Source of the DNA: Convolutriloba macropyga
Taxonomy: Eukaryota
Assembly: GCF_964194025.1 (NCBI RefSeq)
Contig: NC_134476.1
Coordinates: 11,966,001 to 12,030,000, forward strand
Length of the DNA stretch: 64,000 nt
Direction of reading: 5' to 3'
The translations under genes were made by a program, and so were the position numbers. The notes under the pieces are model-generated. The model was not told where the DNA came from and did no database searches. It worked only from the letters and a program-made list of their open reading frames with translations. Positions 12,138 through 37,800 of the stretch are shown piece after piece; the stretch's first letter is position 1, and each line of letters starts with the position of its first letter.

Positions 12138-12195
<58 letters not shown>

Positions 12196-14468: not shown

Positions 14469-14528
14469 TCAGATCCATTTGAAGGCGACGATACTGATCA
14501 GGGCAAAAACAGAGAAAGGAATTATTAG
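14469..14528 (-). pseudogene. Orphan copy of the gene B GPI-signal coding end
   Basis: Translates LIIPFSVFALISIVAFKWI* versus PVILSTVFALFSITASRWI* in gene B. Confidence 0.65.
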
Positions 14529-15918: not shown

Positions 15919-16236
15919 GACAAGTTTATATGGGGAAAAGATTTTAAAGTTCAACATCAGTGAAGGGGGTTACAAGGTTGTTATTTCAAACTGCCCCCAC
16001 CCCGCCCCAGTGGAATATGACTAATTATAATTGATAATTTGTGTGAAATATTTTATGATGGTACACGCTAATTATTGATTGTAGTAGTAGGTCATACAAG
16101 CATTCGTTTGTTCTCACAGGTTTATGAACCCAAATATTGTTCACCAGAGGGGGCGAGGACAGTTAGGAAATTAGTTTTTCAAGCTTTTAGTGCAGTAAAT
16201 AGTTTATCCCTTCTGGATATGTTCTGCTATCATCGT

Positions 16237-16847
16237 TCAGATCCATCGAGAGGCAGTGATACTGAACAGGGCAAAAACGGTGGAAAGAATTACTGGAAAA
16301 GTGTCCACGGAGGGTTTGACGGCAGGACTTCCTTGTGTAGTCCCCCCAACGGTACCACCTACCTGCACTGTCACCATGAGATTGGCCGGATCTCCAACGC
16401 CAAGACTTGTGGCAATAGCTGCAATAGTGGGTGGCAAAGCGGCTACATGGCTCAGGTATGCGTTCTGGACATCAGCGTTACTGAAACCAAATCCAGGGGG
16501 ATAGGTAATGGTGAACACCATCACGGCCATCTCTGTGTTCCGCTTGGCTCGTCTAGACGAGCCGCTGCTCTTCCGGAGAGTGCTAAGACATTTCCCCCTG
16601 TCCTCAAATTTAGCGCAAATTGCGTCCATAACACTGTTGACATTTTGTCTCTCTGGACTCGTTTCGTTGTCATATTCGGCCTTGTATTCGGCGAATGCAT
16701 CTTCCACAGTCGCAACGTCTCCAGAGAGAAGCCCATTGCAGTCGTCTGTCTCGCACAGAATCATGTCACCTGATGCGTTGTAGCCGGACATTTCGGCAAA
16801 GTCCTCCACATCGGCTCCAAAGTACATTTGGGTATACATGTCGATTT
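16237..16847 (-). CDS. Gene B exon 3 (CxxxxCN, second domain, furin site, GPI-type tail)
   Basis: GC-rich ORF 16237..16839 extends to the GATTAG acceptor. ILCETDDCN, AICAKFEDRGKC, SRRAKR, hydrophobic C-terminus. Confidence 0.85.
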
Positions 16848-19800
16848 CTAATCACACAATTCTCTTGTCAGATTTATGTAGGAAAATATAGCGAGTGAAA
16901 AAGAAATGGTGAACTACAGCAAACTTTTTGGGCAACCCAGGATGACGTGCGCGACCAAAACCGACCCTGATCAGACCGACTTGGGACGCCCACGGGGGGT
17001 AAACCGCGACCGCTCCACAGAGCCTAAAAAAAACTTTGTCCAAAAAAAACTTTCTATTTCTCGAAGTAAGTACCTCACAATCAAATTTCCCGCATCCGGA
17101 AATTTGAAAACAAACCCAACTTTTAAATTTAAAAAATTTAATCCCTGGCTACAAAGTTCTGTGAACACTCAAAAACGCCTTCACTGAAACTTCGTACCTT
17201 ATTTCACTAGTTTCACCAAGATTATTTTAAATTGATTCGTTTTTGAATTGTTTGAATTGTACTATATTAAAAGCGATTTAGCATCTACTCTTTGGCTAAT
17301 TGCTTGATATGTTACCATTTAACGCTCTTGGGTTCAACAAAGACGCTCGGTAATGTGCGTTCTTACATAATGTTCCGACCCCGCTCATCCACGTTATTTA
17401 ATTGACAAATCAGGAATAAATAGAAAACCTCCGAAAAAATCACATATCGTCTAACAAACAACTGAGTGAAAAAAGTGCTGGTTTAGAGGGCCGATGATAC
17501 ATGCCATTAATGAGAGTACTCGACAAGACAAACGTAAAAATCGAATACTAGGAAACGTTAATGGCGACCAAAATTCGATGTCTGAATTATAAAAGAAAAC
17601 TTAATAACAAAAAAGAATACGGAATCAGATAAAACCTGAATTCAACAAATTAATGTGTACTTCAGCAGATAATATATGAGACCTCTCAATAATGGGACTC
17701 AGTAAGAGGTCGACAAAAAGCGAAACGGGCAAAGTTCAAATATAAGTTTCTATTTTTGAAAACAACAAATTTCACTTTGACTAAAACCAATAAGTATCAA
17801 CTCGACTCATTCGGAATGTTAATTTAATCTTCATGGTAAGCAACTAAGACCTGTCTCAATCAATAATATGTCAGATGGCTACAAAAAGAACGGAAGAAAC
17901 AAAAAAACCATTTAAAATTTTAAAAACGAAACCGTTGTCGTTCATGAATAACCCTAGTTGTCGTGAATTGTGCATCTTTTCGACGCCAATTGTGCCACTA
18001 CATTAGCTTAAAGATGTGACGGCAGACAAAAAAAAATCAGAAATGGACAAACACTCAAAAATTAGAGTATTTTTGCAAAAATGCGTAGCTCCAAAGTCAA
18101 GAAACAATCAGTTGAATATAAAAACCATTAAAAAGACTAGATTAGAAGAAAGACGATAAGACCTTGCTTCACTAAAAAAAGGATGCTACCCGTCAAAATG
18201 AAACATTTCAAAATGAAACAAAACCAGATTAACTTGAGCCTCTCAGAAAGCAAGTTGTGCTTCTTAATATTGAGACTGAATCATAAGACGACAAAAAGAC
18301 AATAAATAACGACAGAACTCAAAATTTCAAAAAGTTTATCGAACCCACAGTTTTGAATCCACTAGAACTATAAGACATTGAAAACCACTAATAAATTAAA
18401 ACTAACATGGGTTCAAAATTTTTGGTGCTTTGATATTCCTCGATTTTAACTGGGTCTTCTTTGTAAAGGGTCTTTGTTGAAAAGTCAACAAAAAGAATCA
18501 GAAATTATATCGAGAACTCACAAGCTTCTTTTAAGACTCTTAAGGCTCTACACAAAACTAATTCCTAAGGCTTTACAGACATAAGTCAAAATTATAATCA
18601 ACACCAGAAACTGTATTTGGAGCAAAAGGAAAATGATGAGCCCTGTCAATAATGATGAGCCCAGGTTTAGTTAGTTGCTGACGACAACGAGAAAAAAATT
18701 GAAGTACAAAAATAATTTCATTAAAAATTACTCTTAACGTCTTCAAAACTGTTAATTATAGACTAGAATCAGTAAAAAATAAACAAATTTTTCATAGAAG
18801 CAATAAAGGTCATATATGCGCCATAAAATGCGCCGTGTGATAACAAAAAGCAACAATCAATGGAAAAAGAAAAAAAGTGCGAGAACTTTTGGGAGAAAAC
18901 GAAATTTTGCAGACATTAAAACTATAAGGTTCTCACTAAAATTTTTAAAAAGACTTTTTTTTCCTCTTTTCACAATTGGAGATGTCCTTAAAGCAATAAT
19001 TTGAACAATTTAAAAGTTAACAATCTCAAATATATGTAAACCTTAAAAAATAACAAAACTTTTAGGAATTGTCGCAGTAAGAAGGCCAAGAAACTATTAG
19101 TTGAATAGAAATCTTCTTGAAGAGGAGTTCCAATTCACTTGGAATAAATGTTGCCCTGTATGGATTGAGACTAGGCTATATGTGGTCACAACTAAGCGGA
19201 CATTTTTTTAAAAAACAAATAGATTCAAAGTCAAAAGAGGACTTACTTAACATCTGAAAGCATTGTTAGGTTCACATATAGCTCTTGAAAAAACCAATTG
19301 TATCACTGATTAATAAGTCAAAGTCATGAGGCTGCATGAAGTATGGCAAAAGAAGGCAAAATAAAATAAACAAAAAGTTTATGAAACATATAGGCAAAGC
19401 CATATAAAATACGAGTTTTACTCTGAAGACAGAATGGTTTTTGGCCTCACTTGGAAGAAAAAAGGATCTTTTTTATTTGGGCCCGGGTTTTAAATCATTC
19501 TTGTGAGTAATCAATAAAAAAATAATTTTTTTTTGAAAAGGACCACCCCCCCCCCAAATAAAAACCGAGTATTTATTGATGGGAAGAATCCAAGATGAGT
19601 CCAAACCTAGCCCTGATTTGCTGCTTGTCCAGCAAAACTTATTATTATTCCATATGTTTGCAAATTAGATCAAATTGTAAAGGAAGTAACTCAAAAACAA
19701 AAATAATTGATGTATTTTGCATAAATTTTAAGTTAATTGTTTGGAAAGCCCGCCAAGTTTTAAATCCAGAGGACTCCCAGAGCAATTAAAACTACAAATA

Positions 19801-22800
19801 TTTTTTGAAGAGTTATTGAAGATATTGGCAGCAGGTATTTGATCTTTACTTTTGCATATTTAAACAAAGTGACACTGAGAAAGGCGTATTTGGAGACATT
19901 TTTGTTTAAAAAACATTGAAATTCGAAAATTATAGCCGAAGTTTTCACCAAAAGACAAAGGTAAAACCAACCCACAAGCCTCCTTCGACCCCAGTAGTAA
20001 CACCAATAACGTTGTTGTTAACAATTTCATCAGTTCGTAGCAAAAAGAAAAAAAACTTTGGTCAAGAAAAACGAAAAGTGTTAATGAAAACAACGGAATT
20101 CCGTCTATTATTCACAAAAAGCAAAAAATTGAACCTCGATAATTCCCTGTAAGAAAAAAAAATCTTTTTGGTTTTCTTTTCTACACTTGACGGGGTTTTC
20201 TAATTATACCAGTTTTAACTCTCTGCGATGAAAACATTGATCGGCCAAAGTTTTCCGAACAAAAAAATGTGAGTATAGAGTCGATCCCCCCCAAGTGGGT
20301 CGGTACATTAAACATAGAATGATATCACTATCATGAAATCAAATGTAGTCTAAAGCTCCACTACACGGGCTATTGGTTTTAATTGTACACAAGTCACGCT
20401 AAATGAAGGTTGAAATGACTAAGGCTTCCATTGCAAACTATTTTACTTATCATTGATGCAAACAACTGCTGGTATTTTTGAAAAAGTTTAATCTTTATTA
20501 AAACACTTTCCTTTAAAAAATCTGATTAGCTAGTCTTTCATTGTTTAGAGAATGGGTTAAAGGTTAAGCTTGATTAGTTTTGTCTTTTTATCAATCAATT
20601 AAATTACGTCGATAAACAGAGTAGCACCTAACTGAAAAAAAGTGGGGTCAAAGAGTGGCTGAAAACATTTTTTGTTTTAACCTCAACATAGCACGTATAT
20701 TTCTTGATCCTCCAAAATACCAAACAAAAGGGAGCTGATAAATTTGAGTAGTGTTCTAAAATGCACTTATTGTCTTGGGTGGGCAAAACTTATGATCTTT
20801 CCAGCTATTTTGTGCGGGGGATAAAAACTTGTTAAAAAGTCACATTTTTGTGAAATTGTTAAAAAATTTGTAAAAACTTAAAAATTTCTGGCGGTCCATA
20901 ATATTCATTTCAAAGTTTAATTTTTCTTAAACACTTACTTAGTCAAAAAAACTATTCATGGTTTTTTAAAAAGTATGTAACTGAGTTGCCTTTTCCTTAT
21001 TTCAATCTCTTGATAACTTAATGTAATATATCGTAAATAAAACGAAAGTCAAAATTTGGTGGTTTTAAGCCGACATCTGATTTTATTTGATGATTTAATT
21101 GACCATTTGTAATGCCAGAGCAGTGAGTGTGGGTAGATAAAAAACTAATAAAAATTGAGTGCCAGGGCTCCACATTGAGAAATATTGTGTCTGGTATGGA
21201 ATTTGCAGCGTCAGAGGTAAAAAGGAAGCAACTTTGCAGAGATTAAGGATGAAATATTCGTATGAAAAGGACAAAATAAATGCTGAAAACAATATGAATT
21301 GTTCCATAAAAGTGCTGGAAAAGTGTTTGAAAGCGTTCAGTAAAGCGATTCATACAACCAGTTTAAATGACGGGAGAATGAACACTTGTGTTTTTTTAGA
21401 GTAAAAATGGTTATTTTTGGACAATTTTGTGCAACAGATTTCCACAAAAACAATTCCATTATGCAAATATTGTTTTGCATTGAAAATGACAACAAATGTA
21501 GGCTGTTAAATTGCGTAACACAAGATGTTTGAGTTAGAATGCAAATGTGAACACGTAACATAGTGTAAAACTTGGGGAAAATTATAGAAAATGACAAAAT
21601 TGTAACCTGAGAAACTGATGTCCGACTGAACCCTACTGCGCAACTTTGGCAAAATGATAGAATGAGCAGACTTTTTCCCTCACATATTCTAAACTAAGTT
21701 TTTTATGAAGTAAATTGTGTTTTTCCTACTTTAATAAACAATTTTCCTCTTCTGTTTTTGTTCTCCTATTGTTTTGATAGCACTAAAAATAACTATCGCT
21801 GTATGTCTACAGTGTGCTTCTATTTTTATCGAACCTGGATTTATTTTGCCTACCATTGATTGGTTGAAAACTGGCTGAAGATTAATTTTTTACTGTTACA
21901 TGTGACAATATATGTTTTTGATTTTTTGTTCAAAAGTTTTGGTCTCGGCGTTTGTGATTGGCTGGCCGAGTTTTAGGAACTATTGTCTACTACATGCGCC
22001 AAAAATGTTTCTTTCATTAGCATTAAAAATTCAGTGTGGTCGTATCCGCTTTCTTGATTGGTCAATCGAGTTCAAGCTTTATTGCCGTCTTGCACCTGTT
22101 TAAACAAGTGTTTTTTATTATCAATGACAAGGTGTAGTCACAAGTTTGAGTTCGTGTTTAAAAAGTGTTATGTCGTCCTCTCACGATCACTTTGATTTTT
22201 ATCACAATATCGCATGTTCAATGGAATGTGTATATTGTTTACTATGCATAAATTAAAACTACAGTGAAAGCAACAATTTAATTTCAAGTGGAATAGGTTG
22301 CGTTGAGACTAAAAACGAATGAAATGTTAGGCTACATAAAGCGAACAAAAGACACAAACAAAATAATTTCCAATCTAGAAGATCCAAGAAACAAAAGAAA
22401 CAATGTCTTTAATTGAGCTTTAGAAGTCGATATCAAGTGTTCGTTTCTTTGGAGCAAAGCAAAGGCTCAATGGTGGCGTCTCAAGACTGCTTCTGGCAAT
22501 TAGGGAAACTTCCGCTACCTCGGGAATTGAGGGAGCTGACGTTGAATCTGGTAGAGGCGAAGTTGCCTGAGTCATAATGCCTGGACATTCGGGGCTGGTT
22601 GGCATCCGCCAAAAAGTCTCGATAGTTTCTAGTTGCCTCCAATAGCCCTCCTGATTTTCGATTAGAGGTCCCTCTTTGATTTCATAGACATATAGAAATT
22701 TCCTTACATTTTCATCTATCGTCTCTGGACTGAAAACAATTTCTCTTACGTAGCCGGTAACATGATTGATCGTGTACTGTGCTCCTTTAATCAGTCCCTT

Positions 22801-25800
22801 CTGAAATCTGCATGATTGGATGTAGTCAAAAATTACATTTGGTAGCGCCATGTGGTTAATTGTAATCCACTCATTGTCCTGCAGCTCTTGTTTAACAATA
22901 ACGACTTTCTTTTTTTTGTAAAATTCATTTGCTATTTTTCTCAAATCGGGATTGGCCCCTTATTTCAGAAAAATTGCCGCCGAAGACATGTTCAAACTTG
23001 GAAGACAAGGTTGCTGTTAAAGAATTGTTGTGGTAGGTTATCAAATCGTAGAAACTTTTGGTAAAATTTTTCTATATAATCAAAATATAAAACAATTTGT
23101 TCTAAAACAAACAAATTTAGTATCAATCTATATAAACTGTGCTCTGCTAGTTTTTGCCACTTTGTGCATGCGAATTGAAGTCAAGTTTTAAAAATAATTA
23201 ACTTGTTAACAATAGAGAAGAAAGAGAAAAAGAAATGATGAAAGACTGTGAAAAGACTTTTATTGTTTGATAGTAATTAAAATTTAAAAAATCAAAACTT
23301 GTTAAGTTAGTCTGTCACTATTATTAGAATGACAAAATCTTATTCCCTCGTTGTTTAAGGATTGTTAATAATGAATGGTTTTCATAATAGATTGTTCAGA
23401 GAAAACCATTAAAAAGTTCTTTTGGTTGCATTTTGATAAGTAAAAAAGACTTGGCATTCATTTTGATCTATCAATTGTTTGTAGAAACTGTTTGAAAAAC
23501 ATTCACTAGAAGTACTAATCCATTTCAACATCTTATTCTGAAAAGTCAGTAAGATTCAACTATTTCCTGCCAGCAAGAGAACACTTTAGCGAGTTGGACT
23601 GCTCTGATCATGATATTGCTCTAAAGTTGCGTCCGTGTGGAATTCTAATTGCAATAGTGAACCTCTAATTGATTCACATTTTACCAGAAAAACTGTGCAT
23701 ACAGCCAACACAGAAATAAACATCATTGCAATATACTACATTTTCATAACCATGTCATTGCTGCTGTGGAGCAACTACCACAGTCGTTCAAGGATACTTC
23801 TAAACCATATACAATACCGTGTCTCTTCACTTGTTTTCAACTGCAAATTCTCGGGTCTTCTCGAACAGTGCGTTATGGCAAAAGCCTGGAAAAACTTCAG
23901 TCAGTTACAACGACCAGCCCAACCTAAATTGTTCAAATTCTAAAAAAAATTTAACAAATGTCAAAAGGATAAAGACAGTGGATGTTTAAACTCAAACTAA
24001 CTTTTTAAGAACTTGTACGATTGATAATTTCTATATCATTTATAATGTTGGTCTGTAAGGTGAGCTTTCCAAAGTACTTTATATATTGAATAGTGGCTAT
24101 GAATGTTTGCATGCTGACAGTAGTTAGACTTTAAAAAATTTAATATGGAATTGAAATCTTTTATTTAAAGTCGTGTTCTTTTGTCGTTGAAGAAAGAATT
24201 GACCAAAAGAGTTAAATAAAATTGTCAGAGCATATGATTAGCGAGGCGTAGCAAATAATTATCGTTCAAATTCATTATCGAAGGTTTTGAGTTGGCTTAA
24301 GTTTGAGTATTTGAGTTTCTTCCTTTTAAAATCGTATCAAACGGCAAAACAATATTCGGTAGTTTTGTATTGAGATTCCAAGCTGATCTGCCACCTAAAC
24401 TTTTCTCTGTGCAGCAAAAGAACCATTCAATGACTTCCGGCATGTTGCAACGCTGAAGCACTGACTATAATAAGACTATGACTCCCTCACTTGTTAGCTT
24501 TTTGGAAATTGTTTGCTGCAAAAACTCTTTAAAAAATAATTCCAATGAATACAATTTCAAAACAAAAAGCGTATTTCATCTTTATCCACTGGTGGGGTAG
24601 GTGATAATGTAGTTCTTTGTCACTTTTCTTCCGGATTAACATAAAAAGTTGAGCTTTTTCGCTCAGAAATAAAGTTTCTACGTTGAGTGCCAAAACTCCG
24701 TCAAATGTTAGTTGAAAGGATTTTGAGCAATTCATAAGTTCTGGATGAAAAAATTATGAGAAGCCTATTGCATTGAAGTTAAGTCAAAAACTAAAACAAA
24801 CTGGTTGGCACAATTGCTCAAAATTATGCGCTGCCCACCTTTGTCAAGAAAATCCAAAGCTTCAAGAGCATTGAAGTAAATGCGGTGGTTAAATCTAGCT
24901 GAAACCGCAGTTCCAACAAAAGATTAACAGTTTTTTTTACAAAAAAATTGGCTCAAATTGATTTTCTGGTAGTGAAAAGGACTAGTGCTATTAATTCCAA
25001 GGTATGCTTGATTTGCTTCCATTGCAATTATCATACAACGCACTGGCAAAAAATGTCCTAATAGCTCCAACTTATTATTCCAGTTGTAGCTAAAAAAAAC
25101 CTTCGTGGCAATACTTCTGGATATTGCCACAGGTGGATAATGCTATTGAAACACGGCAGGTGTTTTTAGTAGAGTTTTTTCAATTTCCGTCAAAACATGA
25201 TCCGCTACTGTTATTTTTCTAACGTACCGATTAGCTTCAATTACTTTATTTTTGTAATGTTTGTTCAAATGGGAAAATACTGTACAAATATTTTGTAGAC
25301 CTAAAAGAAATTCACAAAGTGACAACACAAAGAAAATCTTCATCACAAGTTATCACAAACATAACTCGTCAGCTTTCTAAAAAAATAGTTTTCCTGAGAG
25401 TTAGCTAAACGAGTTTTTCTGGCCGCAACGTCAATCGCGCAACCATCCGTTCCGTCAATTTTAGCTGGTTCGTCCTCATAAAAAAAATCCTGAAAAACTA
25501 GTTATTTGTTTCTTGCAGTTTTTCTAGACAACACTTCAATTTAATTGAAAGCTTTGTTTGCCTTGTTTCCTTTTGTGTAAGAACTTTTAACACTATTTTA
25601 ACGCAGATACAGTGCGTTCTGTAAAAAAACAATGTAGAGCGTTGTTGCTTAAGTATGGCGCGTCTGTGTTTGCAGCGTTAGTGACTGTCCTGCAATCGCC
25701 GTCATTGTTTCGGGAGATTTTTTATTTAATTTCAAACAGAAGTTTATGTAAACAGATGAAAAAGTTTCTGTCGCCCAAAACTTCAAGCTCAAGCTGTGGA

Positions 25801-28800
25801 CCGTCCATGGACAAGGAATATGATTGTCAAACTTTTAAAGTAAAAGCATTGTCAAGAATAATCAGCAGGAAGCTCTTTTTCAAGGAAATCAGGTGTGGTT
25901 TCTGTTGCCTCTGCTGGCAGTAAAATTAAAAACCATTTTGAACATTAGAAAGAAAATTTGAGCAACTGCTCGTCAAAGCAACTTCTTACTAACTCCTTGG
26001 TTTGGTTTATCAACGTTGGTTTTCAATTTAAGTATTCTTCATGTTTTTGATTCGCCCACTTGTGTCCGTACGGTTTTTTTGAACAGTTGATTTTATTGCC
26101 TGTTTTGGATATTTTTCTTTGTAACTACCTCTGCCAGCTCAACAACTGCTTGAACAATTAGTTCACGTCCAATCTTTTTTACTACAAGCCAAAAAATTCT
26201 TCTTGCAATTGGCAACGCGGCTTTGCCAATACCTGCAGCTAAAGCCCCAAATTCAATACCTCATTAGCGACAGTGTCCGGAAATGTATGGTGACACTGAT
26301 TGCTGTTGATAGTAGGCTTCTGTCTAGTCGATCTTTTTAACATTCAAAGTCAAAATAAGCTTTTCTGTTCCAGCGAATGGAACTAATTATCCGGTTTCTG
26401 TACGCAATTGAATTTGAATTGAGTGAAATTTTTTTGACAATAACTTTTTGTATATCAACAATTCTGTGTGTTGGCTCGATTTCGCAGGGGCTACAGTTTT
26501 TCAGGGGTTGTTTTGAATCCATGACTCGGATAGGAGGAGCGTTAGTATCATCTACGTATTAATACTCAATTATGTTAACGTAAACAAAAATCACTTGCTT
26601 CCCTGCAGACAAATAAAAAGGATAATCACCAATGAAAGTTTTTTCTTCGTCATCTGCCATGGTCAGACTTTCAAAGTGTCTAACATGTTTTCTTCAATAT
26701 GATAACGAGACCCATCCTTAAAAATATTGAAACCTAGTATGCATGAAATTTTGTTATCCGGAAAAGTAATTTTTCCGTTTTAACCGAAAATTAGGAGAAA
26801 AACTCCATTGATTTTGTTGAATTGATAGTCAAAATTAGGTATTCCGGTAGCTGTTTTTAAGGATCTCAAAAAATGGTCATGACTTCCATAGTAACCAATT
26901 CCAATGATACCTTGTTCTCCGTATGTTCTGGAGACAGCTTCTAAAAGAATATTTTTCTCATAAAACTTAAGGCCTTCAGAAGGAAATCTCTTCAAATCAA
27001 TTATGTTCGTTGATTTATTTTTGACCGGAGTTTCACCTAGTGTAACTCATTAATGCGCATCTAGATTAATCTCTTCATTGACACAGAGTCCCGAAAGAGC
27101 CCTTAACTTCTGTACCAGCATCTAACAACAGCCTTTTAGTTCGCTTATTTTTTTTAATCATTTTCTTGAAGGCATCGACTGTTGTTGCTGCGTACTTTAA
27201 TTTAAATGATTGGACCCGTAGATAACGTGAGAGACAGTCAACCGCAAGCAACAAGTATTCTACATCTTTGTTCTCTTTTGCTAGCTTATCCACAATAGCT
27301 AAGTCTAGCAACCAAATTCGTCTACGTAGGCAATAATTTTCAGTGTTGGATTTTTGTTCTATACTTCGTATGCTTTGTGTGGGCATTTCTGCTCTCCAGA
27401 AACAAATTCACTCTACTTCAAATTTGTGCTTTTTTGTAGTTTTCCTACGCTTCCGTATGCTGCAGGACCTTTTGTATATATTATCTCGAGTAGTTTTTTT
27501 CCATTCATCAAAAGAGACCCAGTTTTTCTCCTCCTCCTCCTAAGTTCTGTTTTCCTTTGAAGTTCGGAAACCACTTCAGGCATCTACGGATTGCTCTATA
27601 AGTAATTGGCTGATATTTTGTGCTTGATTCTTTTTGGCGAAATAGTTCTCTTTTTAGTTTTTCGTTTGGTAATTCTATGAATTCCTTTCTAGATCGCAAT
27701 TTTAGCGTTACTGTTGATCACGAAGCTTTTTTTTAATGTTTGAAGCCTCTGGAATCTTGAAATAATCTGAATTCCTTTGTTTTTCAGTTGGTTACTGCAA
27801 ATCACAGGGAAAAATGGGATCATTTATTCCTGTTGCTGCTCCGTCAACAATGAGCTTTTTGGTTTCGTCTCTAACAATTTTTCTGACTCTTTAATGAGGT
27901 TAAATAATTTTTCCGTCGTGGCGCTAGCAGGTTAAGATTTTGAAAATTTGGCTCCTATTTTTAACTCAGTGGGATGAGTTGTTTCCCTTGTATCCAAAGG
28001 TTCCAGGTATTCATTTTTTCATTGTTAGTGTTTTCATATGGTCGCATACGACTCAAAAAAGAAAATTGAGCAGCTGTATGATGATTTCTGGGATCATTTA
28101 CAGTTTGTAAGGAATATGGTTGCTCTTTCATGAACTGATTTTTCGGTATCAAATTAAATTTTTCAGCAGTAGACATGGTTTAACTCAAATGGATGAAACA
28201 AAACTTAATAATGAGTTGAATTAGTTCGGAACCGGTTGTTTCTAGTAAAAGCGCTTGTCGTTTATCCATTGAAGAAGTTTTCTTGATAATACCTTCAAAT
28301 ATGTGTCTGTATTTTTCTAAACCTCTTGGTTTCACTCTAACATGACTCAGTAAAATTCTGTGACGGCATTCACATAAAACCAGTATAACATCACAATCAC
28401 AACTACGTATATAATTCCTTAACTGTTTTGGTTGTAAATACCCCATTTGCTTAGCTACAGACAATTTTTTCTCTATCATTGTTCAGATGGGTTAATTCTG
28501 CTTTATCAAATTGAAGATAGAACAATGTAGGACCTGGCTTAGTAACATTTCAACAGTATCGTGAACAATTAGAATTTTTTGGATCAATATCGATAAGCAA
28601 ATGCCCAAACCGTTCGTTCGTTGCCAATTGATAGCAATGCTTTAAAAATATAACAAGTTTTAACAGCTTGCCTAAAAATTCGACTGGTCAAATATTGCCG
28701 GCTGATTTGGACAAAATGTTGTGTTGCGTTCAAGTCTATTGTAAGAGACCAGTTGCTCTGTTGACAAAACTCTGCTTTATATAAATACCATTATTGTTTT

Positions 28801-31800
28801 TCTGACACCCTGCAGTGGCCAACTTAACAAATTCTTTGTCATTATAAATTTCTTCGCAGGATTCATCGATTATCAAAAGAAAGTTTGCAAGGCTATTCAA
28901 AAATTCTAAGTTAGCATACTTTTTGAAAACAACTCCAATTTTTTCCTCATTTTGATGTATACTTGTTGCATTGCCCGGTATAAAAAATTAATGTGTTTAA
29001 ATTTTTGGTAAAAATTAATTCAACTCAACATTTTGAAAACTGACTCTGCTTTGCCACATTCTGATGGCCCTACAACGGCCATGAAAACCTATCTTGAGTA
29101 GATATAAATTTATGCATAGTCTTTGGTTGGGTGAAATACGTCCAATTAAAATTGACAATATGGGTATCCAAACTGAAGTTTCTTCCCAATTTGATTTTGA
29201 CCCTGTTAATTCAACAATGCAAATTGATATTAGCAGTCATATATCAAACATTTGCACAAAAAATACATGTTTTGACGATGGCAAAGTTGTTTAATTACAA
29301 AGTTTCCCCAGAAAATCTGCTACTACTTACTTTTTCAAAAAAAAAATTCTTCTACGACAGCATCAATTGTTACTCCCTCTATCTCATAAAAATACGAAAA
29401 TTTGTTGAAATAATATAAAAATGATATCAGTTTAAATAAAAGAACTCAAGAATTAATTGTTTGTACAAAGCTCTGCAATTGATTGACATACGAAAAACTC
29501 AATATTTCCTCTAAGTACTTGTATATGAAATTCATGAGCGATTATATATTTCATTCCGCAAATGCCGATTTATTCTTGCTGTCTTATAATTTTCAATATC
29601 AATTTCAGAGTATTGAAAAAGCCCTTAAGTTCTGTACCAGCATCTACCCACAAATTTAGGTTTCTTATTTTTCACCCTTGTTTCATGAAGGCATCGCCTG
29701 TTGATCTGGCGAACTTTATTTTTAACAATTTGACCGGTAGATAACGTGAGAGACAGTCAACCGCAATCAACAAATACTCTACATCTCTGTTCTTTTGTGC
29801 TAATTTATCCAATTGAGTAAAGTATAGCGACAAAATTTTTGTTTATGTGGTACGCAATAACTTTCAGTGCTGGATTTCTTCCAATTTTTCTTATGCTTTC
29901 GGCAAATTCTTTGTCATTATAAATTTCGTCGCACATGTCATCGATTATCAAAAGAAAGTTTACAAGGCTATTCAAAAATTCTAAGTTGGCATAATTTTTG
30001 AAAACAACTCCAATTTTTTCCTCATTTTGATGTATATTTGTTGCATTGCCCTGTATAAAAATTTATTGTGTTTAAATTTTGGGTAAAAATTAATTCAATT
30101 CAACATTTTGAAAACTGACTCTGCTTTGCCACATCCTGAAGGCCCTACAACAGCCATGAAAACCTATCTTGAGTAGATATAAATTTATGCATAGTCTTTG
30201 GTTGGGTGAAATGCGTCCAATTAAAATTGACAATATGGATATCCAAACTGAAGTTTCTTCCCAATTTAGTTTTGACCCTGTTAATTCAACAATGCAAATT
30301 GATATTAGCAGTAATATATCAAACATTTGCACAAAAAAATACAAAATTTGACGATGGCAAAGTTGTTTGGTTCCAAAATTTCCCAGACGATCTGCTACTA
30401 CTTACTTTTTCAAAAAAATTTCTACAACAACATCAATTGTTACTCCAACCATCTCAAAATAATATGAAAAATTGTCGAAGGAATATAAAATTGATATCAA
30501 TTTATATAAAAGAACTCAAGAATTAATTGTTTGTACAATGCAAAGCTCTGCAGTTGACTGATATACGAAAAAAATTAATTTTTCCTCTAAGTACTTGTAT
30601 ATCAAATTCAAGAGCGATTAAATATTTCATTCCACAAATGCCGATTTATTCTTGCTGTCTTATAATTTTCAATATCGATTTCAGAGTATTGAAAAAGCCC
30701 TTAAGTTCTTTACCAGTATCTACCCACAAATTTAGGTTTCTTATTTTTCACCCTTGTTTCATGAAGGCATCGCCTGTTGATCTGGCGTACTTTATTTTCA
30801 ACAATTTGACCGGTAGATAACGTGAGAGACAGTCAACCGCAATCAACAAATACTCTACATCTTTGTTCTTTTGTGCTAATTTATCCAATTGAGTCAAGTT
30901 TAGCGACAAAATTTTTGTTTATGTGGTACGCAATAACTTTCAGTGCTGGATTTTTTCCAATTTTTCTTATGCTTTCGGCAAATTCTTTGTCATTATAAAT
31001 TTCATCGCACAAGTCATCGATTATCAAAAGAAAGTTTACAAGGCTTTTCAAAAATTCTAAGTTGGCATACTTTTTGAAAACAACTCCAATTTTTTCCTCA
31101 TTTTGATGTATATTTGTAGCATTGCCCTGTATAAAAATTTATTGTGTTTAAATTTTGGGTAAAAATTAATTCAATTCAACATTTTGAAAACTGACTCTGC
31201 TTTGCCACATCCTGAAGGCCCTACAACGGCCATGAAAACCTATCTTGAGTAGATATAAATTTATGCATAGTCTTTGGTTGGGTGAAATGCGTCGAATTAA
31301 AATTGACAATATGGATATCCAAACTGAAGTTTCTTCCCAATTTGGTTTTGACCCTGTTAATTCAACAATGCAAATTGATATTAGCAGTAATATATCAAAC
31401 ATTTGTACAAACAAATGCAAAATTTGACGATGGCAAAGTTGTTTGGTTACAAAATTTCCCAGACGATCTGCTACTACTTACTTTTTCAAAAAAATTTCTA
31501 CGACAGCATCAATTGTTACTCCATCCATCTCAAAATAATATGAAAAATTGTTGAAGGAATATAAAATTGATATCAATTTATATAAAAGAACTCAAGAATT
31601 AATTGTTTGTACAAAGCAAAGCTCTGCAATTGACTGATATACGAAAATATCAATTTTTCCTCTAAGTACTTGTATATCAAATTCAGGAGCGATTAAATAT
31701 TTGATTCCACAAATGCCGATTTATTCTTGCTGTCTTATAATTTTCAATATCGATTTCAGAGTATTGAAAACGCCCTTAAGTTGTTTACCAGTATCTACCC

Positions 31801-34800
31801 ACAAATTTAGGTTTCTTATTTTTACCATTTTCATGAAAGCATCGGCTGATGTTCTGGCGTACTTTGATTTCAATGATCTGACCAGTAGATAACGTGAGAG
31901 ACAGTCAACCGCAACCAACAAGTACTCTACAACTTTGTTCTTTTGTGCTAATTTATCCACATGAGTCAAATACTCAAAATTAAGCCAACTCAAAACCAGA
32001 ACTCAAAATTCAGTGTCGGTTTTTGAATTTGTATCGCGCAAGTGATGTTTGGTTACGAATTTCCTTCGATAATGAATATGAACGATAATTATTTGCTACG
32101 CTTCGCTAATTATATGCTCTGACAATTTTAATTAACTCTTTTGCTCAATTCTTTCTTCAAAGACAACAAAAGAACACGACTTTAAATAAAAGATTTCAAT
32201 TCCATATTAAATTTTTTAAAATCAAACTACTGTCAGCATGCAAACATTCATAGCCACTATTCAATATATAAAGTACTTTGGAAAGCTCACCCTACAGACC
32301 AACATTATATATAATATAAAAATTATCAATCGTACAAGTTCTAAAAAAGTTAGTTTGAGTTTAAACATCCACTGTCTTTATCCTTTTGACATTTGTTAAG
32401 TTTTTTTAGAATTTTAACAATTTAGATTGGGCTGGTCGTTGTAACTGACTGAAGTTTTTCGAGGCTTTTGCAATAACGCACTGTGCGAGAAGACCCGAGA
32501 ATTTGCAGTTGAAAACAAGTGAAGAGACACGGTATTGTATATGGTTTAGAAGTATCCTTGAACGACTGTGGTAGTTGCTCCACAGCAGCAATGACATGGT
32601 TATGAAAATGTAGTATATTGCAATGATGTTTATTTCGGTGTTGGCTGTATGCACAGTTTTTCTGGTAAAATGTGAATCAATTTGAGGTTCACTATTGCAA
32701 TTAGAATTCCACACGGACGCAACTTTAGAGCAATATCATGATCAGAGCAGTCCAACTCGCTAAAGTGTTCTCTTGCTGCAGGAAAAAGTTGAATCTTACT
32801 GACTTTTCAGAATAAGACATTGAAATGGATCAGGACCTCTGGTGAATGTTTTTCAAACAGTTTCTACAAACAATTGATAGATCAAAATGAATGCCGAGTC
32901 TTTTTTACTTATCAAAAAGCAACCTAAAGAACTTTTTAATGGTTTTCTCTGAACAATCTATTATCAAAACCATTTACTATTAACAATCCTTGAACAACGA
33001 GGGAATAAGATTTTGTCATTCTAATAATAGCGACAGACTAACTTATCAAGTTCTGATTTTTTAAATTTTAAATACTATCAAACAATAACTGCGATGCTAA
33101 TTGCATTCTCTTTTCAGCTTACTATACAAAAAGTTAAACTTCAAAATTTGTTGTTTTCTGACTGGCTAAGATAAAAACCAAATATATCCAACCATTAAGG
33201 CTTATATGACAAGTGTAGTTTTGAGCTATTGTTAGGAGCAACACAGCTAAACATGTAGAAAAAACAATCCAACACAAATTATCTTAACCTTCATTTCTTG
33301 CATACTGTTTGATTACTCACAAAATCCAAATCTTTGCTCGACAACTGAAACTTTAAATTGTTTCCAAAGTCTTTTCACAGTCTTTCATCATTTCTTTTTC
33401 TCTTTCTTCTCTATTGTTTACAAGATAATTATTTTCAAAACTTGACTTCAATTCGCATCCACAAAGTGGCAAAAACTAGCAGAGCACAGTTTATATAGAT
33501 TGATACTAAATTTGTTTGTTTAAGAACAAATTGTTTTATCTTTTGATTATAAAGAAAAATTTTACCAAAAGTTTCCACGATTTGATAACCTACCACAACA
33601 ATTCTTTAACAGCAACCTTTTCTTCCAAGTTTGAACATGTCTTCGGCGGCAATTTTTCTGAAATAAGGGGCCAATCCCGATTTGAGAAAAATAGCAAATG
33701 AAACTTAAAATGGAACTAAAATGGAACAAAAAAAGAAAGTCGTTATTGTTAAACAAGAGCTGCAGGACAATGAGTGGATTACAATTAACCACATGGCGCT
33801 ACCAATTGTAATTTTTGACTACATCCAATCATGCAGATTTCAGAAGGGACTGATTAAAGGAGCACAGTACACGATCAATCATGTTACCGGCTACGTATGA
33901 GAAATTGTTTTCAGTCCAGACACGATAGATGAAAATGTAAGGAAAATTCTATATGACTATGAAATCAAAGAGGTACCTCTAATCGAAAATCAGGAGGGCT
34001 ATTGGAGGCAACTAGAAACTATTGAGACTTTTTGGCGGATGCCAACCAGCCCCGAATGTCCAGGCATTACAACTCAGGCAACTTCGCCTCTACCAGATTC
34101 AACGTCAGCTCCCTCAATTCCCGAGGTAGCGGAAGTTTCCCTAATTGCCAGCAGCAGTCTTGAGACGCCACCATTGAGCCTTTGCTTTGCTCCAAAGAAA
34201 CGAACACTTGATATCGACTTCTTAAGCTCAATTAAAGACATTGTTTCTTTTGTTTCTTGGATCTTCTAGATTGGAAATTATTTTGTTTGTGTCTTTTGTT
34301 CGCTTTATAGAGCCTAACATTTCATTCTTTTTTAGTCTCAACGCAACCTATTCCACTTGAAATTAAATTGTTGCTTTCACTGTAGTTTTAATTTATGCAC
34401 AGTAAACAATATACACATTCCATTGAACATGCGATATTGTGATAAAAATCAAAGGAATCGTGAGAGGACGACATAACACTTTTTAAACACGAACTCAAAC
34501 TTGTGACTACACATTGTCTTTGATAATAAAAGACACGTGTTTAAACAGGTGCAAGACGGCAATAAAGCTTGAACTCGATTGACCAATCAAGAAAGCGGAT
34601 ACGACCACACTGAATTTTTAATGCTAATGAAAGAAACATTTTTGGCGCATGTAGTAGACAATAGTTCCTAAAACTCGGCCAGCCAATCACAAACGCCGAG
34701 ACCAAAACTTTTGAACAAAAAATCAAAAACATATATTGTCACATGTAACAGTAAAAAATTAATCTTCAGCCAGTTTTCAACCAATCAATGGTAGGCAAAA

Positions 34801-37800
34801 TAAATCCAGGTTCGATAAAAATAGAAGCACACTGTAGACATACAGCGATAGTTATTTTTAGTGCTATCAAAACAATAGGAGAACAAAAACAGAAGAGGAA
34901 AATTGTTTATTAAAGTAGGAAAAACACAATTTACTTCATAAAAAACTTAATTTAGAATATGTGAGGGAAAAAGTCTGCTCATTCTATCATTTTGCCAAAG
35001 TTGCGCAGTAGGGTTCAGTCGGACATCAGTTTCTCAGGTTACAATTTTGTCATTTTTTATAATTTTCCCCAAGTTTTACACTATGTTACGTGTTCACATT
35101 TGCATTCTAACTCAAACATCTTGTGTTACGCAATTTAACAGCCTACATTTGTTGTCATTTTCAATGCAAAACAATATTTGCATAATGGAATTGTTATTGT
35201 GGAAATCTGTTGCACAAAATTGTCCAAAAATAACCATTTTTACTCTAAAAAAAACACAAGTGTTCATTCTCCCGTCATTTAAACTGGTTGTATGAATCGC
35301 TTTACTGAACGCTTTCAAACACTCTTTCAGTACTTTTTTGGAACAATTCATATTGTTTTCAGCATTTATTTTGTCCTTTTCATATGAATATTTCATCCTT
35401 AGTTTCTGCTTTCTTTTTACGCCTGACGCTGCAAATTTCATACCAGACACAATATCTCTCAATGTGGTGCCCTGGCACTCAAGTTTTATTAGTTTTTTAT
35501 CTGCCCACACTCACTGCTCTGGCATTACAAATGGTCAATTCAATCATCAAATAAAACCAGATGTCGGCTTAAAACCACCAAATTTTGATTTTCGTTTTAT
35601 TTACGATATATTACATTAAGTTATCAAGAGATTGAGATAAAGAAAAGGCAAGTCAAATACATGCTTTTTATAAAACCATAAATATTTTTTTTTGACAAAG
35701 AAAGTGTTTAAGAAAATTTAAACTTTGAAATGAATATTATGGACCGCCAGAAATTTTTAAGTTTTTACAAATTTTTTAACAATTTCACAAAAATGTGACT
35801 TTTTAACAAGTTTTTATCCCCCGCACAAAATAGCTGGAAAGATCATAAGTTTTGCCCACCCAAGACAATAAGTGCATTTTAGAACACTACTCAAATTTAT
35901 CAGCTCCCTTTTGTTTGGTATTTTGGAGGATCAAGAAATATACGTGCTATGTTGAGGTTAAAACAAAAAATGTTTTCAGCCACTCTTTGACCCCACTTTT
36001 TTTCAGTTAGGTGCTACTCTGTTTATCGACGTAATTTAATTGATTGATAAAAAGACAAAACTAATCAAGCTTAACCTTTAACCCATTCTCTAAACAATGA
36101 AAGACTAGCTAATCAGATTTTTTAAAGGAAAGTGTTTTAATTTATAAAGATTAAACTTTTTCAAAAATACCAGCAGTTGTTTCCATCAATGATAAGTAAA
36201 ATAGTTTGCAATGGAAGCCTTAGTCATTTCAACCTTCATTTAGCGTGACTTGTGTACAATTAAAACCAATAGCCCGTGTAGTGGAGCTTTAGACTACATT
36301 TGATTTCATGATAGTGATATCATTCTATGTTTAATGTACCGACCCACTTGGGGGGGATCGACTCTATACTCACATTTTTTTGTTCGGAAAACTTTGGCCG
36401 ATCAATGTTTTCATCGCAGAGAGTTAAAACTGGTATAATTAGAAAACCCCGTCAAGTGTAGAAAAGAAAACCAAAAAGATTTTTTTTCTTACAGGGAATT
36501 ATCGAGGTTCAATTTTTTGCTTTTTGTGAATAATAGACGGAATTCCGTTGTTTTCATTCACACTTTTCGTATTTCTTGACCAAAGTTTTTTTTTCTTTTT
36601 GCTACAAACTGATGAAATTGTTAACAACAACGTTATTGGTGTTACTACTGGGGATAAAGGAGGCTTGTGGGTTGGTTTTACCTTTGTCTTTTGGTGAAAA
36701 CTTCGGCTATAATTTTCGAATTTCAATGTTTTTTAAACAAAAATGTCTCCAAATACGCCTTTCTCAGTGTCACTTTGTTTAAATATTCAAAAGTAAAGAT
36801 CAAATACCTGCTGCCAATATCTTCAATAACTCTTCAAAAAATATTTGTGGTTTTAATTGCTCTGGGAGTCCTCTGGATTTAAAACTTGGCGGGCTTTCCA
36901 AACAATTAACTTAAAATTTATGCAAAATACATCAATTATTTTTGTTTTTGAGTTACTTCCTTTACAATTTGATCTAATTTGCAAACATATGGAATAATAA
37001 TAAGTTTTGCTGGACAAGCAGCAAATCAGGGCTAGGTTTGGACTCATCTTGGATTCTTCCCATCAATAAATACTCGGTTTTTATTTGGGGGGGGGGGGGG
37101 GCTGGTCCTTTTCAAAAAAAAATTATTTTTCTATTGATTACTCACAAGAATGATTTAAAACCCGGGCCCAAATAAAAAAGATCCTATTTTCTTCCAAATG
37201 AGGCCAAAAACCATTCTGTCTTCAGAGTAAAACTCGTATTTTATATGGCTTTGCCTATATGTTTCATAAACTTTTTGTTTATTTTATTTTGCCTTCTTTT
37301 GCCATACTTCATGCAGCCTCATGACTTTGACTTATTAATCAGTGATACAATTTGTTTTTTCAAGAGCTATATGTGAACCTAACAATGCTTTCAGATGTTA
37401 AGTAAGTCCTCTTTTGACTTTGAATCTATTTGTATTTTTAAAAAATGTCCGCTTAGTTGTGACCACATATAGCCTAGTCTCAATCCATACAGGGCAACAT
37501 TTATTCCAAGTGAATTGGAACTCCTCTTCAAGAAGATTTCTATTCAACTAATAGTTTCTTGGCCTTCTTACTGCGACAATTCTTAAAAGTTTTGTTATTT
37601 TTTAAGGTTTACATATATTTGAGATTGTTAACTTCAAATTGTTCAAATTATTGCTTTAAGGACATCTCCAATTGTGAAAAGAGATGAAAAAAAAGTCTTT
37701 TTAAAAATTTTAGTGAGAACCTTATAGTTTTAATGTCTGCGAAACTGCACAAAATTGTCCAAAAATAACCATTTTTACTCTAAAAAAACACAAGTGTTTC

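What the first reader, a model, noticed from the sequence alone, without database searches (positions are those of the whole stretch)
18909..37740. 18.8-kb quasi-palindrome of Polinton DNA inside a host intron: candidate long-hairpin dsRNA / small-RNA source
Seen: ~5.4 and ~5.8-kb inverted arms around a 7.65-kb spacer. These are not ordinary TIRs: the inner ends cut through the protease gene (left) and fuse to an integrase fragment (right), and the outer ~1.9 kb belongs to a different element family. Known: Polinton TIRs are usually under ~1.5 kb and non-coding, and long intronic inverted repeats are substrates for Dicer and ADAR. Inference: gene B pre-mRNA would fold into a multi-kb duplex of viral and transposon sequence, which could supply siRNAs against related Polintons under a host promoter, acting as an immune-memory-like locus.
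Basis: partly seen in the sequence, partly recalled or inferred. Interest (0 to 1): 0.75.

Follow-up and report, generated by a model that had tools for sequence, protein, structure and literature searches.

The report
Dead Polinton with overgrown inverted arms
A decayed virus-like transposon (Polinton/Maverick type) in an intron of an acoel worm gene has had its terminal inverted repeats enlarged to about 5.4 kb by repeated end-to-end copying, the last round dragging in neighbouring intron DNA; it could fold into a long RNA hairpin, but nothing here shows that the animal uses it for silencing.

Summary
The quasi-palindrome is real: arms 18905-24284 and 32063-37744 (5,245 matched bases, 97.7% identity), spacer 7,778 bp. 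The window is Convolutriloba macropyga chromosome OZ077307.1. The structure lies wholly in intron 2 (16848-39764, minus strand) of LOC142345605. Relatives about 80% identical carry an adenain-type protease and an rve integrase. This copy has AG...CT termini and a 6-bp target-site duplication (AATTTG), so the true element is 20747-38706. No protein-primed polymerase was found in any copy. Canonical copies have TIRs of about 1.9 kb; here two further internal segments are present in both arms (about 3.8 kb). The outer 1.9 kb is not another transposon family. It is left-flanking intron DNA, copied inverted into the right arm together with the left terminus and the duplication. That copy exists only in this haplotype, and its two copies are 99% identical. 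A sister contig, probably the other haplotype, has the 3.8-kb arms but not this extension. All recognisable element genes are broken. The arms could form strong dsRNA (58 perfect runs of at least 21 bp), but only 3.5% of arm 21-mers occur in four other copies. Best reading: a dead element whose palindrome grows by inverted-repeat template switching. The siRNA-source idea remains untested.

The parts
16237..16847 (-). Host gene LOC142345605 (XP_075253855.1, 385 aa), coding exon 3 with stop codon
   Evidence: tblastn of P0068; acceptor AG at 16848-16849; gene range from L007
16848..39764 (-). Host intron 2 (22,917 bp, GT..AG, phase 1), containing the whole structure
   Evidence: exon lengths of 250+297+608 nt add up to 385 codons
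39765..40061 (-). Host coding exon 2
42298..42547 (-). Host coding exon 1 (start codon at 42547)
18905..24284 (.). Left arm of the quasi-palindrome (flank-derived part + Polinton left end)
32063..37744 (.). Right arm of the quasi-palindrome
18905..20740 (.). Segment X': native left-flanking intron DNA that is duplicated (inverted) in the right arm; contiguous with the further flank in both haplotypes
   Evidence: no match in canonical copies; 0% of 21-mers shared with other copies
20741..20746 (.). Left target-site duplication AATTTG
   Evidence: same in the sister haplotype
20747..38706 (.). The Polinton/Maverick-type element as it stands (17,960 bp), 5'-AG...CT-3' type termini
   Evidence: right terminus shared with L001, L002 and L003, after which the flanks diverge
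38707..38712 (.). Right target-site duplication AATTTG
20747..22219 (.). Left copy of the canonical TIR (segment E'), lacking ~270 bp of subterminal sequence
22220..23651 (.). Segment D' in the left arm: in canonical copies this segment exists only at the right end
23642..24284 (.). Segment B in the left arm (native position, continues into the spacer); 10-bp overlap with D' at the junction
22423..22989 (-). g189-family gene, left-arm copy (broken: 1 stop)
33637..34221 (+). g189-family gene, right-arm copy (broken: 3 stops)
24228..24589 (-). Adenain-type (Peptidase_C5) protease gene remnant (broken); its 3' end lies inside the arm
24750..27028 (-). Remnants of three genes of unknown function (g103, g130, g282 of L001), all broken by stops
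27078..27411 (-). rve integrase remnant (about 40% of the reference retained, broken)
27488..28900 (-). Remnants of g191 and g190 (both broken by stops)
28828..31972 (.). Tandem array, ~2.9 units of ~1,075 bp, each an integrase fragment fused to the g190 3' region; its last unit abuts the right arm
31966..32707 (.). Segment B' (inverted extra copy of B, including the 3' end of the protease gene) at the inner end of the right arm
32698..35860 (.). Segments D and E (native right end) up to the end of TIR sub-segment E2a
35861..37744 (.). Inverted copy of the left terminus (35861-35891), the TSD (35892-35897) and 1.85 kb of left flank (X) embedded in the right arm; haplotype-specific
37746..38706 (.). 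Second direct copy of TIR sub-segment E2 (E2b, to 38409) followed by the intact subterminal and terminal TIR sequence

Best explanation
This is one old, dead insertion of a polymerase-less Polinton/Maverick-type element in intron 2 of the Convolutriloba macropyga gene LOC142345605. Its terminal inverted repeats have grown stepwise by copying from one end to the other. Canonical relatives are ordered TIR-B-C-F-D-TIR, with TIRs of ~1.9 kb. In this copy the right-end segment D also sits inverted next to the left TIR. The left-end segment B also sits inverted next to D on the right, and F is lost. That gives ~3.8-kb arms, which both haplotypes share. Later, in the haplotype of the window only, the right arm acquired an inverted copy of the left terminus, the target-site duplication and 1.85 kb of flanking intron. 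This copy is bracketed by a direct duplication of a 660-bp TIR segment. That is the signature of an inverted-repeat-mediated template switch out of the right arm into the left arm, followed by a second switch back. The last step is shown by the sequence comparison. That the earlier two steps used the same process, and whether they happened in the chromosome or before integration, is inferred. The palindrome is most likely a neutral by-product of the instability of long inverted repeats. If the host intron is transcribed, it would fold into a ~5.2-kb imperfect duplex and may be diced or edited. No selected silencing role is indicated.
For: Element identity: the arm ORF has 66 relatives. Relatives L001 and L005 carry Peptidase_C5 (33.8 bits against a cutoff of 21.3) and rve (33.3 against 32.6). 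There is ~80% collinear DNA identity to L001, L002, L004 and L005. Bounds: the terminus is shared with L001, L002 and L003, and the 6-bp TSD AATTTG is on both sides in both haplotypes. Canonical TIR: 1,137 bp is seen in L001, and it is ~1.9 kb if it runs to the terminus. B lies only on the left and D only on the right in L001, L002 and L005, with identical breakpoints relative to all three. Sister contig ctg35043 (L006+L003): both flanks are homologous at 94-96%, it has the same long arms, and it has no X copy and a single E2 on the right. Coverage is 51x and 52x for the two contigs, and heterozygosity is 3.65% (PMC13650328). Dating: the X copies are 98.98% identical to each other but 96.3-96.5% identical to the sister's X. 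E2a matches E2b and differs from the left arm at 36 proximal sites. E2a then matches the left arm at 3 distal sites. Both window arms share a subterminal deletion that the sister's left arm lacks. Arm history: 31 informative sites group orthologous arms and 15 group the arms of one haplotype. A ~280-bp left-arm deletion is shared by both haplotypes. Decay: every recognisable gene is broken. Two assemblies agree on the arms.
Against: No read-level evidence could be inspected. The HiFi reads were ~10 kb (PMC13650328), so none spans the full 18.8 kb. That the sister contig is the other haplotype rather than a recent segmental duplicate is inferred from coverage and flank homology. The second junction of the last event has a 5-nt filler and only imperfect microhomology, so end joining cannot be excluded. 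The alternative order of events (an ancestral X copy lost in the sister by recombination between E2a and E2b) is less parsimonious but not impossible. 'No function' is an absence-of-evidence statement: no RNA data were available.
Confidence: 0.72

Rival explanations
1. Functional hairpin-RNA locus. The host promoter transcribes the intron and the arms pair into a multi-kb duplex. Dicer-type processing then yields siRNAs that repress related Polintons, giving an immune-memory-like function.
For: Both arms lie in one intron of a predicted host gene, and the 3' splice site is 2 kb beyond the distal arm. The full hairpin therefore exists before splicing can finish (inference). The duplex has 58 perfect runs of at least 21 bp covering 4,638 bp, the longest 424 bp. 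With up to 2 mismatches, 42% of arm 21-nt windows find a match in one of four other copies. A precedent exists in maize Mu killer (PMC3440606) and in Drosophila hpRNA loci (PMC10317233). Acoels are reported to lack major conserved immune signalling pathways (PMC12849515), which would raise the value of RNA-based defence.
Against: No expression or small-RNA evidence is available. Only 3.5% of arm 21-mers match four other copies exactly. The nearest non-allelic relatives of the arm gene are at most 76% identical in protein. About 34% of each arm is host intron DNA with no viral target. The arms cover the non-coding TIR, one small gene of unknown function and gene ends, not the integrase or most of the protease. 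Sister-haplotype arms have decayed to 93.8% identity, which does not look like maintenance. Excised intronic dsRNA is nuclear and in animals is more typically a substrate for editing (general knowledge).
Confidence: 0.08
2. The ~3.8-kb TIRs arose before integration. They would have formed during the element's own protein-primed, adenovirus-like replication, in which a damaged end is rebuilt from the opposite end. The element then integrated already carrying them, and only the flank-capturing step happened in the chromosome.
For: The element has intact-looking termini and a clean 6-bp TSD around the long-armed form in both haplotypes. Other copies also show internal duplications, such as three D segments in L002, so the family rearranges readily. 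End-to-end copying that lengthens terminal repeats is known for linear viral genomes (general knowledge).
Against: No other sampled copy (L001, L002, L004, L005) has the D'|B junction. The lineage is represented only by this locus among 66 relatives of the arm gene. No polymerase gene was detected in the family. The one datable extension demonstrably occurred in situ.
Confidence: 0.3
3. Assembly artefact: a chimeric or mis-joined palindrome produced from repeat-rich HiFi data of an ultra-low-input library.
For: The library was PCR-amplified ultra-low-input with ~10-kb fragments. Manual curation made 510 breaks and 798 joins genome-wide (PMC13650328). No single read can span both arms.
Against: The arms differ at 123 substitutions and 14 indels. 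A sister contig carries the same inner junctions with its own substitutions. Two assemblies of the reads agree base for base over the arms. The intron length is the same in both. The E2a/E2b/left-arm site pattern is an evolutionary signature, not a mis-join.
Confidence: 0.03
4. Two independent insertions of the same element in opposite orientation (head to head or nested) simulate a palindrome.
For: Self-targeting nested insertions are common for some transposons (general knowledge).
Against: Only one pair of outer termini and one TSD exist. The third terminus, inside the right arm, carries the left TSD and the left flank, so it is a copy of the left junction and not a new insertion. The unique spacer is collinear with one canonical copy.
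Confidence: 0.02

Closest known systems
Polinton/Maverick elements of animals and protists
   Same: Adenain-type cysteine protease and rve integrase in relatives, long TIRs, 5'-AG..CT-3' type ends, a 6-bp target-site duplication, and a size of 13-18 kb.
   Different: No protein-primed B-family polymerase, packaging ATPase or capsid gene could be recognised in any of five copies. Canonical TIRs are already ~1.9 kb. This copy has 3.8-kb arms that contain genes and, in one haplotype, host DNA.
Maize Mu killer (PMC3440606)
   Same: A partial inverted duplication of a DNA transposon including its TIR, proposed to be transcribed by read-through from a flanking host gene into a ~4-kb hairpin.
   Different: Mu killer matches its active target closely and is genetically shown to silence it through siRNAs. 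Here the arms are ~80% identical to other copies, the element family may not be active, and no RNA evidence exists.
Drosophila hairpin-RNA (hpRNA) endo-siRNA loci (PMC10317233)
   Same: Long inverted duplications of selfish-gene sequence that could give Dicer substrates.
   Different: hpRNA loci are dedicated transcription units with short loops and demonstrated siRNAs and targets. This one is an intronic palindrome with a 7.8-kb loop and no demonstrated product.
DUP-TRP/INV-DUP rearrangements mediated by inverted repeats (PMC4352052, PMC11293582)
   Same: One junction lies inside a pair of inverted repeats. An inverted inserted segment is bracketed by a direct duplication. A second junction has little or no homology. 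This matches the arrangement E2a, then the inverted left end plus flank, then E2b.
   Different: Those are large de novo human copy-number events between low-copy repeats. Here the inverted repeats are the TIRs of one transposon and the event is 2.5 kb.
Polinton TIR-derived repeats at C. elegans eri-6/7 (PMC11414722)
   Same: Polinton remnants and their TIRs restructure a host gene, and repeated TIR sequence in pre-mRNAs matters for RNA processing.
   Different: There 744-bp TIRs occur as direct repeats and enable trans-splicing. Here the arms are inverted, lie within one intron, and have no known effect on the host transcript.

Membership tests
Polinton/Maverick | Retroviral-type (rve, DDE) integrase | tested here: met
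   L001 integrase matches rve at 33.3 bits against a cutoff of 32.6. The window remnant 27078-27411 scores E 0.0055 alone and has 559 relatives, 50 of them at E<=1e-10. The full-length relatives P0103 and P0096 carry rve.
Polinton/Maverick | Protein-primed family-B DNA polymerase | tested here: not met
   No DNA_pol_B_2 or other polymerase hit on any called gene of L001-L005, on L001 proteins or on window pieces. The ~9.6-kb interior of L001 is tiled by genes of at most 351 aa. The family is therefore filed as Polinton-type but polymerase-less, possibly non-autonomous.
Polinton/Maverick | Adenovirus-type cysteine protease | tested here: met
   L001 2132-2557 matches Peptidase_C5 at E 3.5e-08, 33.8 bits against a cutoff of 21.3. 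A remnant is present at window 24228-24589.
Polinton/Maverick | 6-bp target-site duplication and 5'-AG...CT-3' termini with TIRs | tested here: met
   AATTTG lies on both sides in the window and in the sister haplotype. The termini begin AG and end CT. TIRs are seen in L001.
Polinton/Maverick | Capsid genes (double and single jelly-roll) and A32-type packaging ATPase | tested here: inconclusive
   No Pfam or PDB sequence hit for g351, g282, g191, g190, g130, g103 or g189. No Walker A motif was found. AlphaFold2 on the g189 family gave pLDDT 37, so no fold comparison was possible.
hpRNA / hairpin siRNA source | Long inverted repeat within one transcription unit | tested here: met
   Both arms lie inside intron 2 of a three-exon gene model with GT..AG introns. 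Actual transcription was not testable.
hpRNA / hairpin siRNA source | Small RNAs of Dicer size mapping to the arms and not the loop | not testable with these tools
   No RNA data are accessible. Only a poly(A) RNA-seq run is listed for the species in the genome note (PMC13650328).
hpRNA / hairpin siRNA source | Near-perfect complementarity to trans targets | tested here: not met
   3.5% of arm 21-mers match four other copies exactly, 20% match with up to 1 mismatch and 42% with up to 2. Only four other copies could be sampled at DNA level.
Inverted-repeat-mediated template-switch rearrangement (DUP-TRP/INV-DUP type) | Junction 1 inside the inverted repeats; an inverted segment bracketed by a direct duplication; junction 2 with microhomology or filler | tested here: met
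   E2a switches from right-arm-like (36 sites) to left-arm-like (3 sites). The inverted left end plus flank lies between E2a and E2b. Junction 2 has a 5-nt filler and nearby imperfect microhomology.

The most novel reading that the evidence does not exclude
The host gene's pre-mRNA folds the arms into a multi-kb duplex that is processed into small RNAs. These act, with mismatch tolerance, on the dozens of related Polinton-type copies in the acoel genome. The palindrome is kept long by arm-to-arm conversion because of that role. It would be an animal counterpart of maize Mu killer, directed at a virus-like element, in a lineage reported to lack much conserved immune signalling.
Probability: 0.07. 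Interest if true: 0.75.

Novelty: new variant of a known kind. Interest (0 to 1): 0.4.

Why it matters
The locus is a cleanly resolved natural example of how a transposon's terminal inverted repeats can grow into a large palindrome. It also shows how such growth can capture host DNA. Two haplotypes preserve the states before and after the last step, which documents inverted-repeat template switching outside the human disease loci where it is usually studied. It also shows that a 'long TIR' in an assembly need not be part of the mobile unit. If the hairpin were shown to yield small RNAs, the two haplotypes would offer an internal control. The flank-derived 1.9 kb forms a duplex in one haplotype only, which would allow a study of how new dsRNA sources arise from virus-like elements in an early-branching bilaterian.

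Tried and rejected
(1) Pfam on stop-to-stop pieces of the arms and spacer gave only one sub-threshold rve hit. The Polinton identity came only from the genomic context of relatives.

(2) I first read the thrice-repeated 660-bp TG...CA unit flanking 1.9 kb as an LTR-type retroelement, or as an insertion in the TIR. I rejected this once the sister haplotype showed that the 1.9 kb is flank DNA lying outside the terminus and the TSD.

(3) A search for the left terminus with up to 3 mismatches failed because the left terminus is more diverged. It was found through the sister locus.

I did not try it any other way.

(5) The host-exon search returned only the window's own protein. The cluster listing gave the species and the sister allele.

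(6) AlphaFold2 on the g189 family failed with pLDDT 37, so no fold search was run.

(7) PDB sequence searches with g351, g282 and the integrase gave nothing.

(8) The last two context look-ups, on full-length integrase relatives, landed on 2-3-kb contigs and said nothing about the polymerase. A viral-contig scan found one distant relative, with an integrase 30% identical, in a Polinton-like-virus/virophage-type genome with an A32 ATPase and an SF1 helicase. This is weak context only.

(9) Rfam found no known structured RNA in the intron.

(10) I ran no further search on the flank segment X. Whether X is itself repeat-derived remains open. One 190-bp stretch matches window 2018-2222 at 73%.

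Gene breaks were counted, not located.

Full report
OBSERVATION. The inverted repeat exists as described. The repeat finder and a self-BLAST place the arms at 18905-24284 and 32063-37744. A global alignment gives 5,245 matched bases, 123 mismatches (59 transitions, 64 transversions) and 14 indel events, or 97.7% identity. The spacer is 24285-32062 (7,778 bp). It contains a ~1,075-bp tandem array at 28828-31972. There are no N runs. No ORF longer than 179 codons lies in the region. Pfam on all stop-to-stop pieces of at least 45 aa from the left arm and spacer gave only a sub-threshold integrase-core hit at 27078-27407, minus strand.

WHAT THE DNA IS. The longest arm ORF (22423-22959, minus strand) has 66 relatives of ~189 aa at about 75% identity, all on long ENA contigs. 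Loci around these relatives (L001, L002, L004, L005) are ~80% identical and collinear with window 20775-35863. They carry an adenain-type protease (Peptidase_C5, 33.8 bits against a cutoff of 21.3) and an rve integrase (33.3 against 32.6). The right terminus is shared by the window, L001, L002 and L003, after which the flanks diverge. It ends at 38706 and is followed by AATTTG. The left terminus is more diverged and was recognised through the sister locus. It starts at 20747 and is preceded by AATTTG. The sister locus has the same 6-bp duplication on both sides. The element is therefore 20747-38706 (17,960 bp). It has AG...CT-type ends, a 6-bp TSD, a protease and an integrase, which makes it Polinton/Maverick-type. 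No protein-primed polymerase, packaging ATPase or capsid gene was recognisable in any of five copies. I therefore file the family as Polinton-type but polymerase-less, and autonomy is unknown. The integrase remnant has 559 relatives in the 1.84-billion-protein library. Two full-length relatives lay on contigs too short to show neighbouring genes. One distant relative, 30% identical, lies in a Polinton-like-virus/virophage-type viral contig with an A32 ATPase and an SF1 helicase.

HOST AND INTRON. The exon-like ORF at 16240-16851 (minus strand) belongs to a protein cluster that includes XP_075253855.1, LOC142345605 of Convolutriloba macropyga. The NCBI locus L007 (OZ077307.1) is 100% identical to window 6237-52547. 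The 385-aa protein maps to three minus-strand exons: 42547-42298, 40061-39765 and 16847-16240. Both introns have GT..AG boundaries and the exon lengths add up to exactly 385 codons. Intron 2 (16848-39764, 22,917 bp) contains the whole element and both arms. The spacer genes of the element lie on the same strand as the host gene.

IS IT AN ARTEFACT? The ENA contig ctg35099_51x, a separate assembly of the same project, reproduces the left arm without any difference. It reproduces the right arm, the embedded flank copy and the terminus with one indel in 20 kb, and it has the same intron length. A second contig, ctg35043_52x (L006+L003), holds the same locus at 94-96% identity with homologous flanks on both sides. 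The genome note reports HiFi reads of ~10 kb, hifiasm assembly, 3.65% heterozygosity and deposited alternate-haplotype contigs (PMC13650328). The two contigs are best read as the two haplotypes, although this is an inference. Reads of 10 kb cannot span the whole structure. Even so, the arms differ enough to be told apart, and the sister locus carries the same inner junctions with its own substitutions.

HOW THE ARMS WERE BUILT. The segments are named in L001 coordinates. E is the TIR (10773 to the terminus, ~1.9 kb; 1,137 bp of the left copy are seen before the locus edge, 96-97% complementary). B is 1536-2288, C is 2288-7744, F is 7744-8972 and D is 8972-10773. Canonical copies (L001, L002, L005) read E'-B-C-F-D-E, with B only on the left and D only on the right. 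The window reads X'-E'-D'-B-C-array-B'-D-E-X-E2-E3. Both arms therefore contain D and B, and F is missing. The D'|B junction overlaps by 10 bp and maps to the same breakpoints in all three canonical copies. The array|B' junction joins an integrase fragment to the 3' part of the protease gene. Two end-to-end copying events explain the pattern. In the first, the right end D-E was copied inverted onto the left, next to B. In the second, the left end, now including B, was copied inverted onto the right, replacing F. Both events predate the haplotype split, because the sister has the same junctions. The four arms show 31 informative sites grouping orthologous arms and 15 grouping the two arms of one haplotype. 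Both left arms share a ~280-bp deletion. In the E1 region the window's two arms and the sister's right arm are ~98% alike while the sister's left arm is ~90%. The arms have therefore diverged, with patches of conversion.

THE OUTER 1.9 KB. In the sister locus the left arm ends in the left terminus, and X follows it outward after the TSD. X is contiguous with the rest of the left flank in both haplotypes, so X is intron DNA and not part of the element. The sister's right arm has one E2 and no X. In the window the right arm runs as follows. E2a comes first. Then come the left terminus (35861-35891), the TSD, and X up to 37744, all inverted. Then come a 5-nt filler, a second E2 (E2b) and the intact terminal sequence. 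The two X copies are 98.98% identical to each other and 96.3-96.5% identical to the sister's X. E2a matches E2b and differs from the left arm at 36 proximal sites, then matches the left arm at 3 distal sites. Both window arms lack ~270 bp of subterminal TIR that the sister's left arm and the terminal copy after E2b retain. The most economical history has two steps. First, a subterminal deletion occurred in the left arm. Then a template switch ran from the right E2 into the left arm, copied outward through the terminus and TSD into 1.85 kb of flank, and switched back to the start of the right E2. This matches the junction pattern of DUP-TRP/INV-DUP events mediated by inverted repeats (PMC4352052, PMC11293582). 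The alternative is an ancestral X copy that the sister lost. That requires extra conversion events and is less likely.

STATE OF THE ELEMENT. All recognisable genes are broken when compared with L001's proteins (counts only).
- Protease: at least 1 frameshift and 5 stops.
- g103: 2 stops.
- g130: 4 stops.
- g282: 7 stops.
- Integrase: about 40% retained, at least 1 frameshift and 2 stops.
- g191: 5 stops.
- g190: 5 stops.
- g351: about 20% retained.
- g189: 1 stop in the left arm and 3 stops in the right arm.

THE HAIRPIN IDEA. Physically the arms would make a strong duplex, with 58 perfect runs of at least 21 bp covering 4,638 bp, the longest 424 bp. The 3' splice site lies 2 kb beyond the distal arm, so a complete hairpin can exist in the nascent transcript or the lariat (inference). 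Several points count against a defence role.
- About 34% of each arm is host intron.
- The viral part is TIR, one small gene of unknown function and gene ends.
- The nearest non-allelic relatives of the arm gene are at most 76% identical.
- Only 3.5% of arm 21-mers occur exactly in four other copies. With up to 1 mismatch 20% match, and with up to 2 mismatches 42%.
- The sister arms have decayed to 93.8% identity.
- Rfam finds no known RNA in the intron.

Nothing can be said about transcription or small RNAs with these tools.

COMPARISON AND VERDICT. The nearest functional precedent is maize Mu killer. It is an inverted partial duplication of a transposon, proposed to be read through from a flanking gene into a ~4-kb hairpin (PMC3440606). 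Drosophila hpRNA loci are a second precedent (PMC10317233). Polinton TIRs are known to reshape a host small-RNA gene in C. elegans (PMC11414722). This locus shares the architecture of those precedents but not their demonstrated products or their close match to targets. I rate it a new variant of a known kind: a dead Polinton-type insertion whose palindrome has grown stepwise and captured host DNA. Interest is moderate (0.4). The siRNA-source reading is a low-probability but testable possibility.

Noticed in passing
window 5365-9845 (minus strand): An apparently intact LINE-like retrotransposon. It has a 646-aa ORF with RVT_1 (E 7e-38) and an upstream 274-aa coiled-coil ORF. The chromosome assembly and ENA contig ctg35099 differ at 87 positions confined to 6822-10000, and are otherwise identical up to 26827. 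The two assemblies probably resolved this repeat or its haplotype differently.
   Followed up: partly
window 11418-16086: A block of diverged direct repeats (73-83% identity, spacing ~1.26 kb and ~3 kb) lies just downstream of the host gene's last exon. Nature unknown.
   Followed up: no
window 44232-49537 (minus strand): The neighbouring gene (359-aa product, L007 3011-8316) appears to be a tandem paralogue of LOC142345605. Its last exon ORF, 44235-44858, has similar composition, and a 43-aa stretch is 44% identical. Both proteins lack Pfam hits. LOC142345605 has an N-terminal signal-like stretch and a C-terminal hydrophobic stretch.
   Followed up: no
window 53170-54756 (plus strand): A second retroelement remnant: a 302-aa ORF with the C-terminal part of RVT_1 (E 1.5e-10), followed by a 226-aa ORF with a Cys/His-rich motif.
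   Followed up: no
window 28828-31972; L003 1041-8197: The spacer's tandem array (an integrase fragment fused to the g190 3' region) differs between haplotypes. The window has about 2.9 units of 1,075 bp. The sister has larger repeat units of roughly 2.2-2.7 kb, making its element 18,541 bp. The array is unstable.
   Followed up: partly
L002 7953-13145: Another family copy carries three tandem partial copies of segment D, the segment with the 189-aa gene. Internal duplication seems common in this family.
   Followed up: no
window 38467-38569 and 38610-38700; L001 12560-12660: The subterminal TIR holds a 39-bp tandem repeat (2.7 copies) and, close to the terminus, one or two copies of a short GC-rich palindromic motif conserved in L001 and L002. 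These could be protein-binding sites of the element's ends.
   Followed up: no
window ~42270-42297 (minus strand, start of host intron 1): A run of at least 16 C residues follows a few bases after the exon-1 splice donor.
   Followed up: no
L013 (IMG/VR UViG_3300018414_000119): A 16-kb viral contig with an rve integrase (30% identical to the integrase alignment), an A32-type ATPase, an SF1 helicase fused to HNH, and a GIY-YIG nuclease. It looks like a Polinton-like virus or virophage genome.
   Followed up: partly
window 51815-52547: The end of an EF-hand/mitochondrial-carrier gene (Mito_carr plus EF-hand Pfam hits on the 532-aa product) lies at the edge of L007.
   Followed up: no
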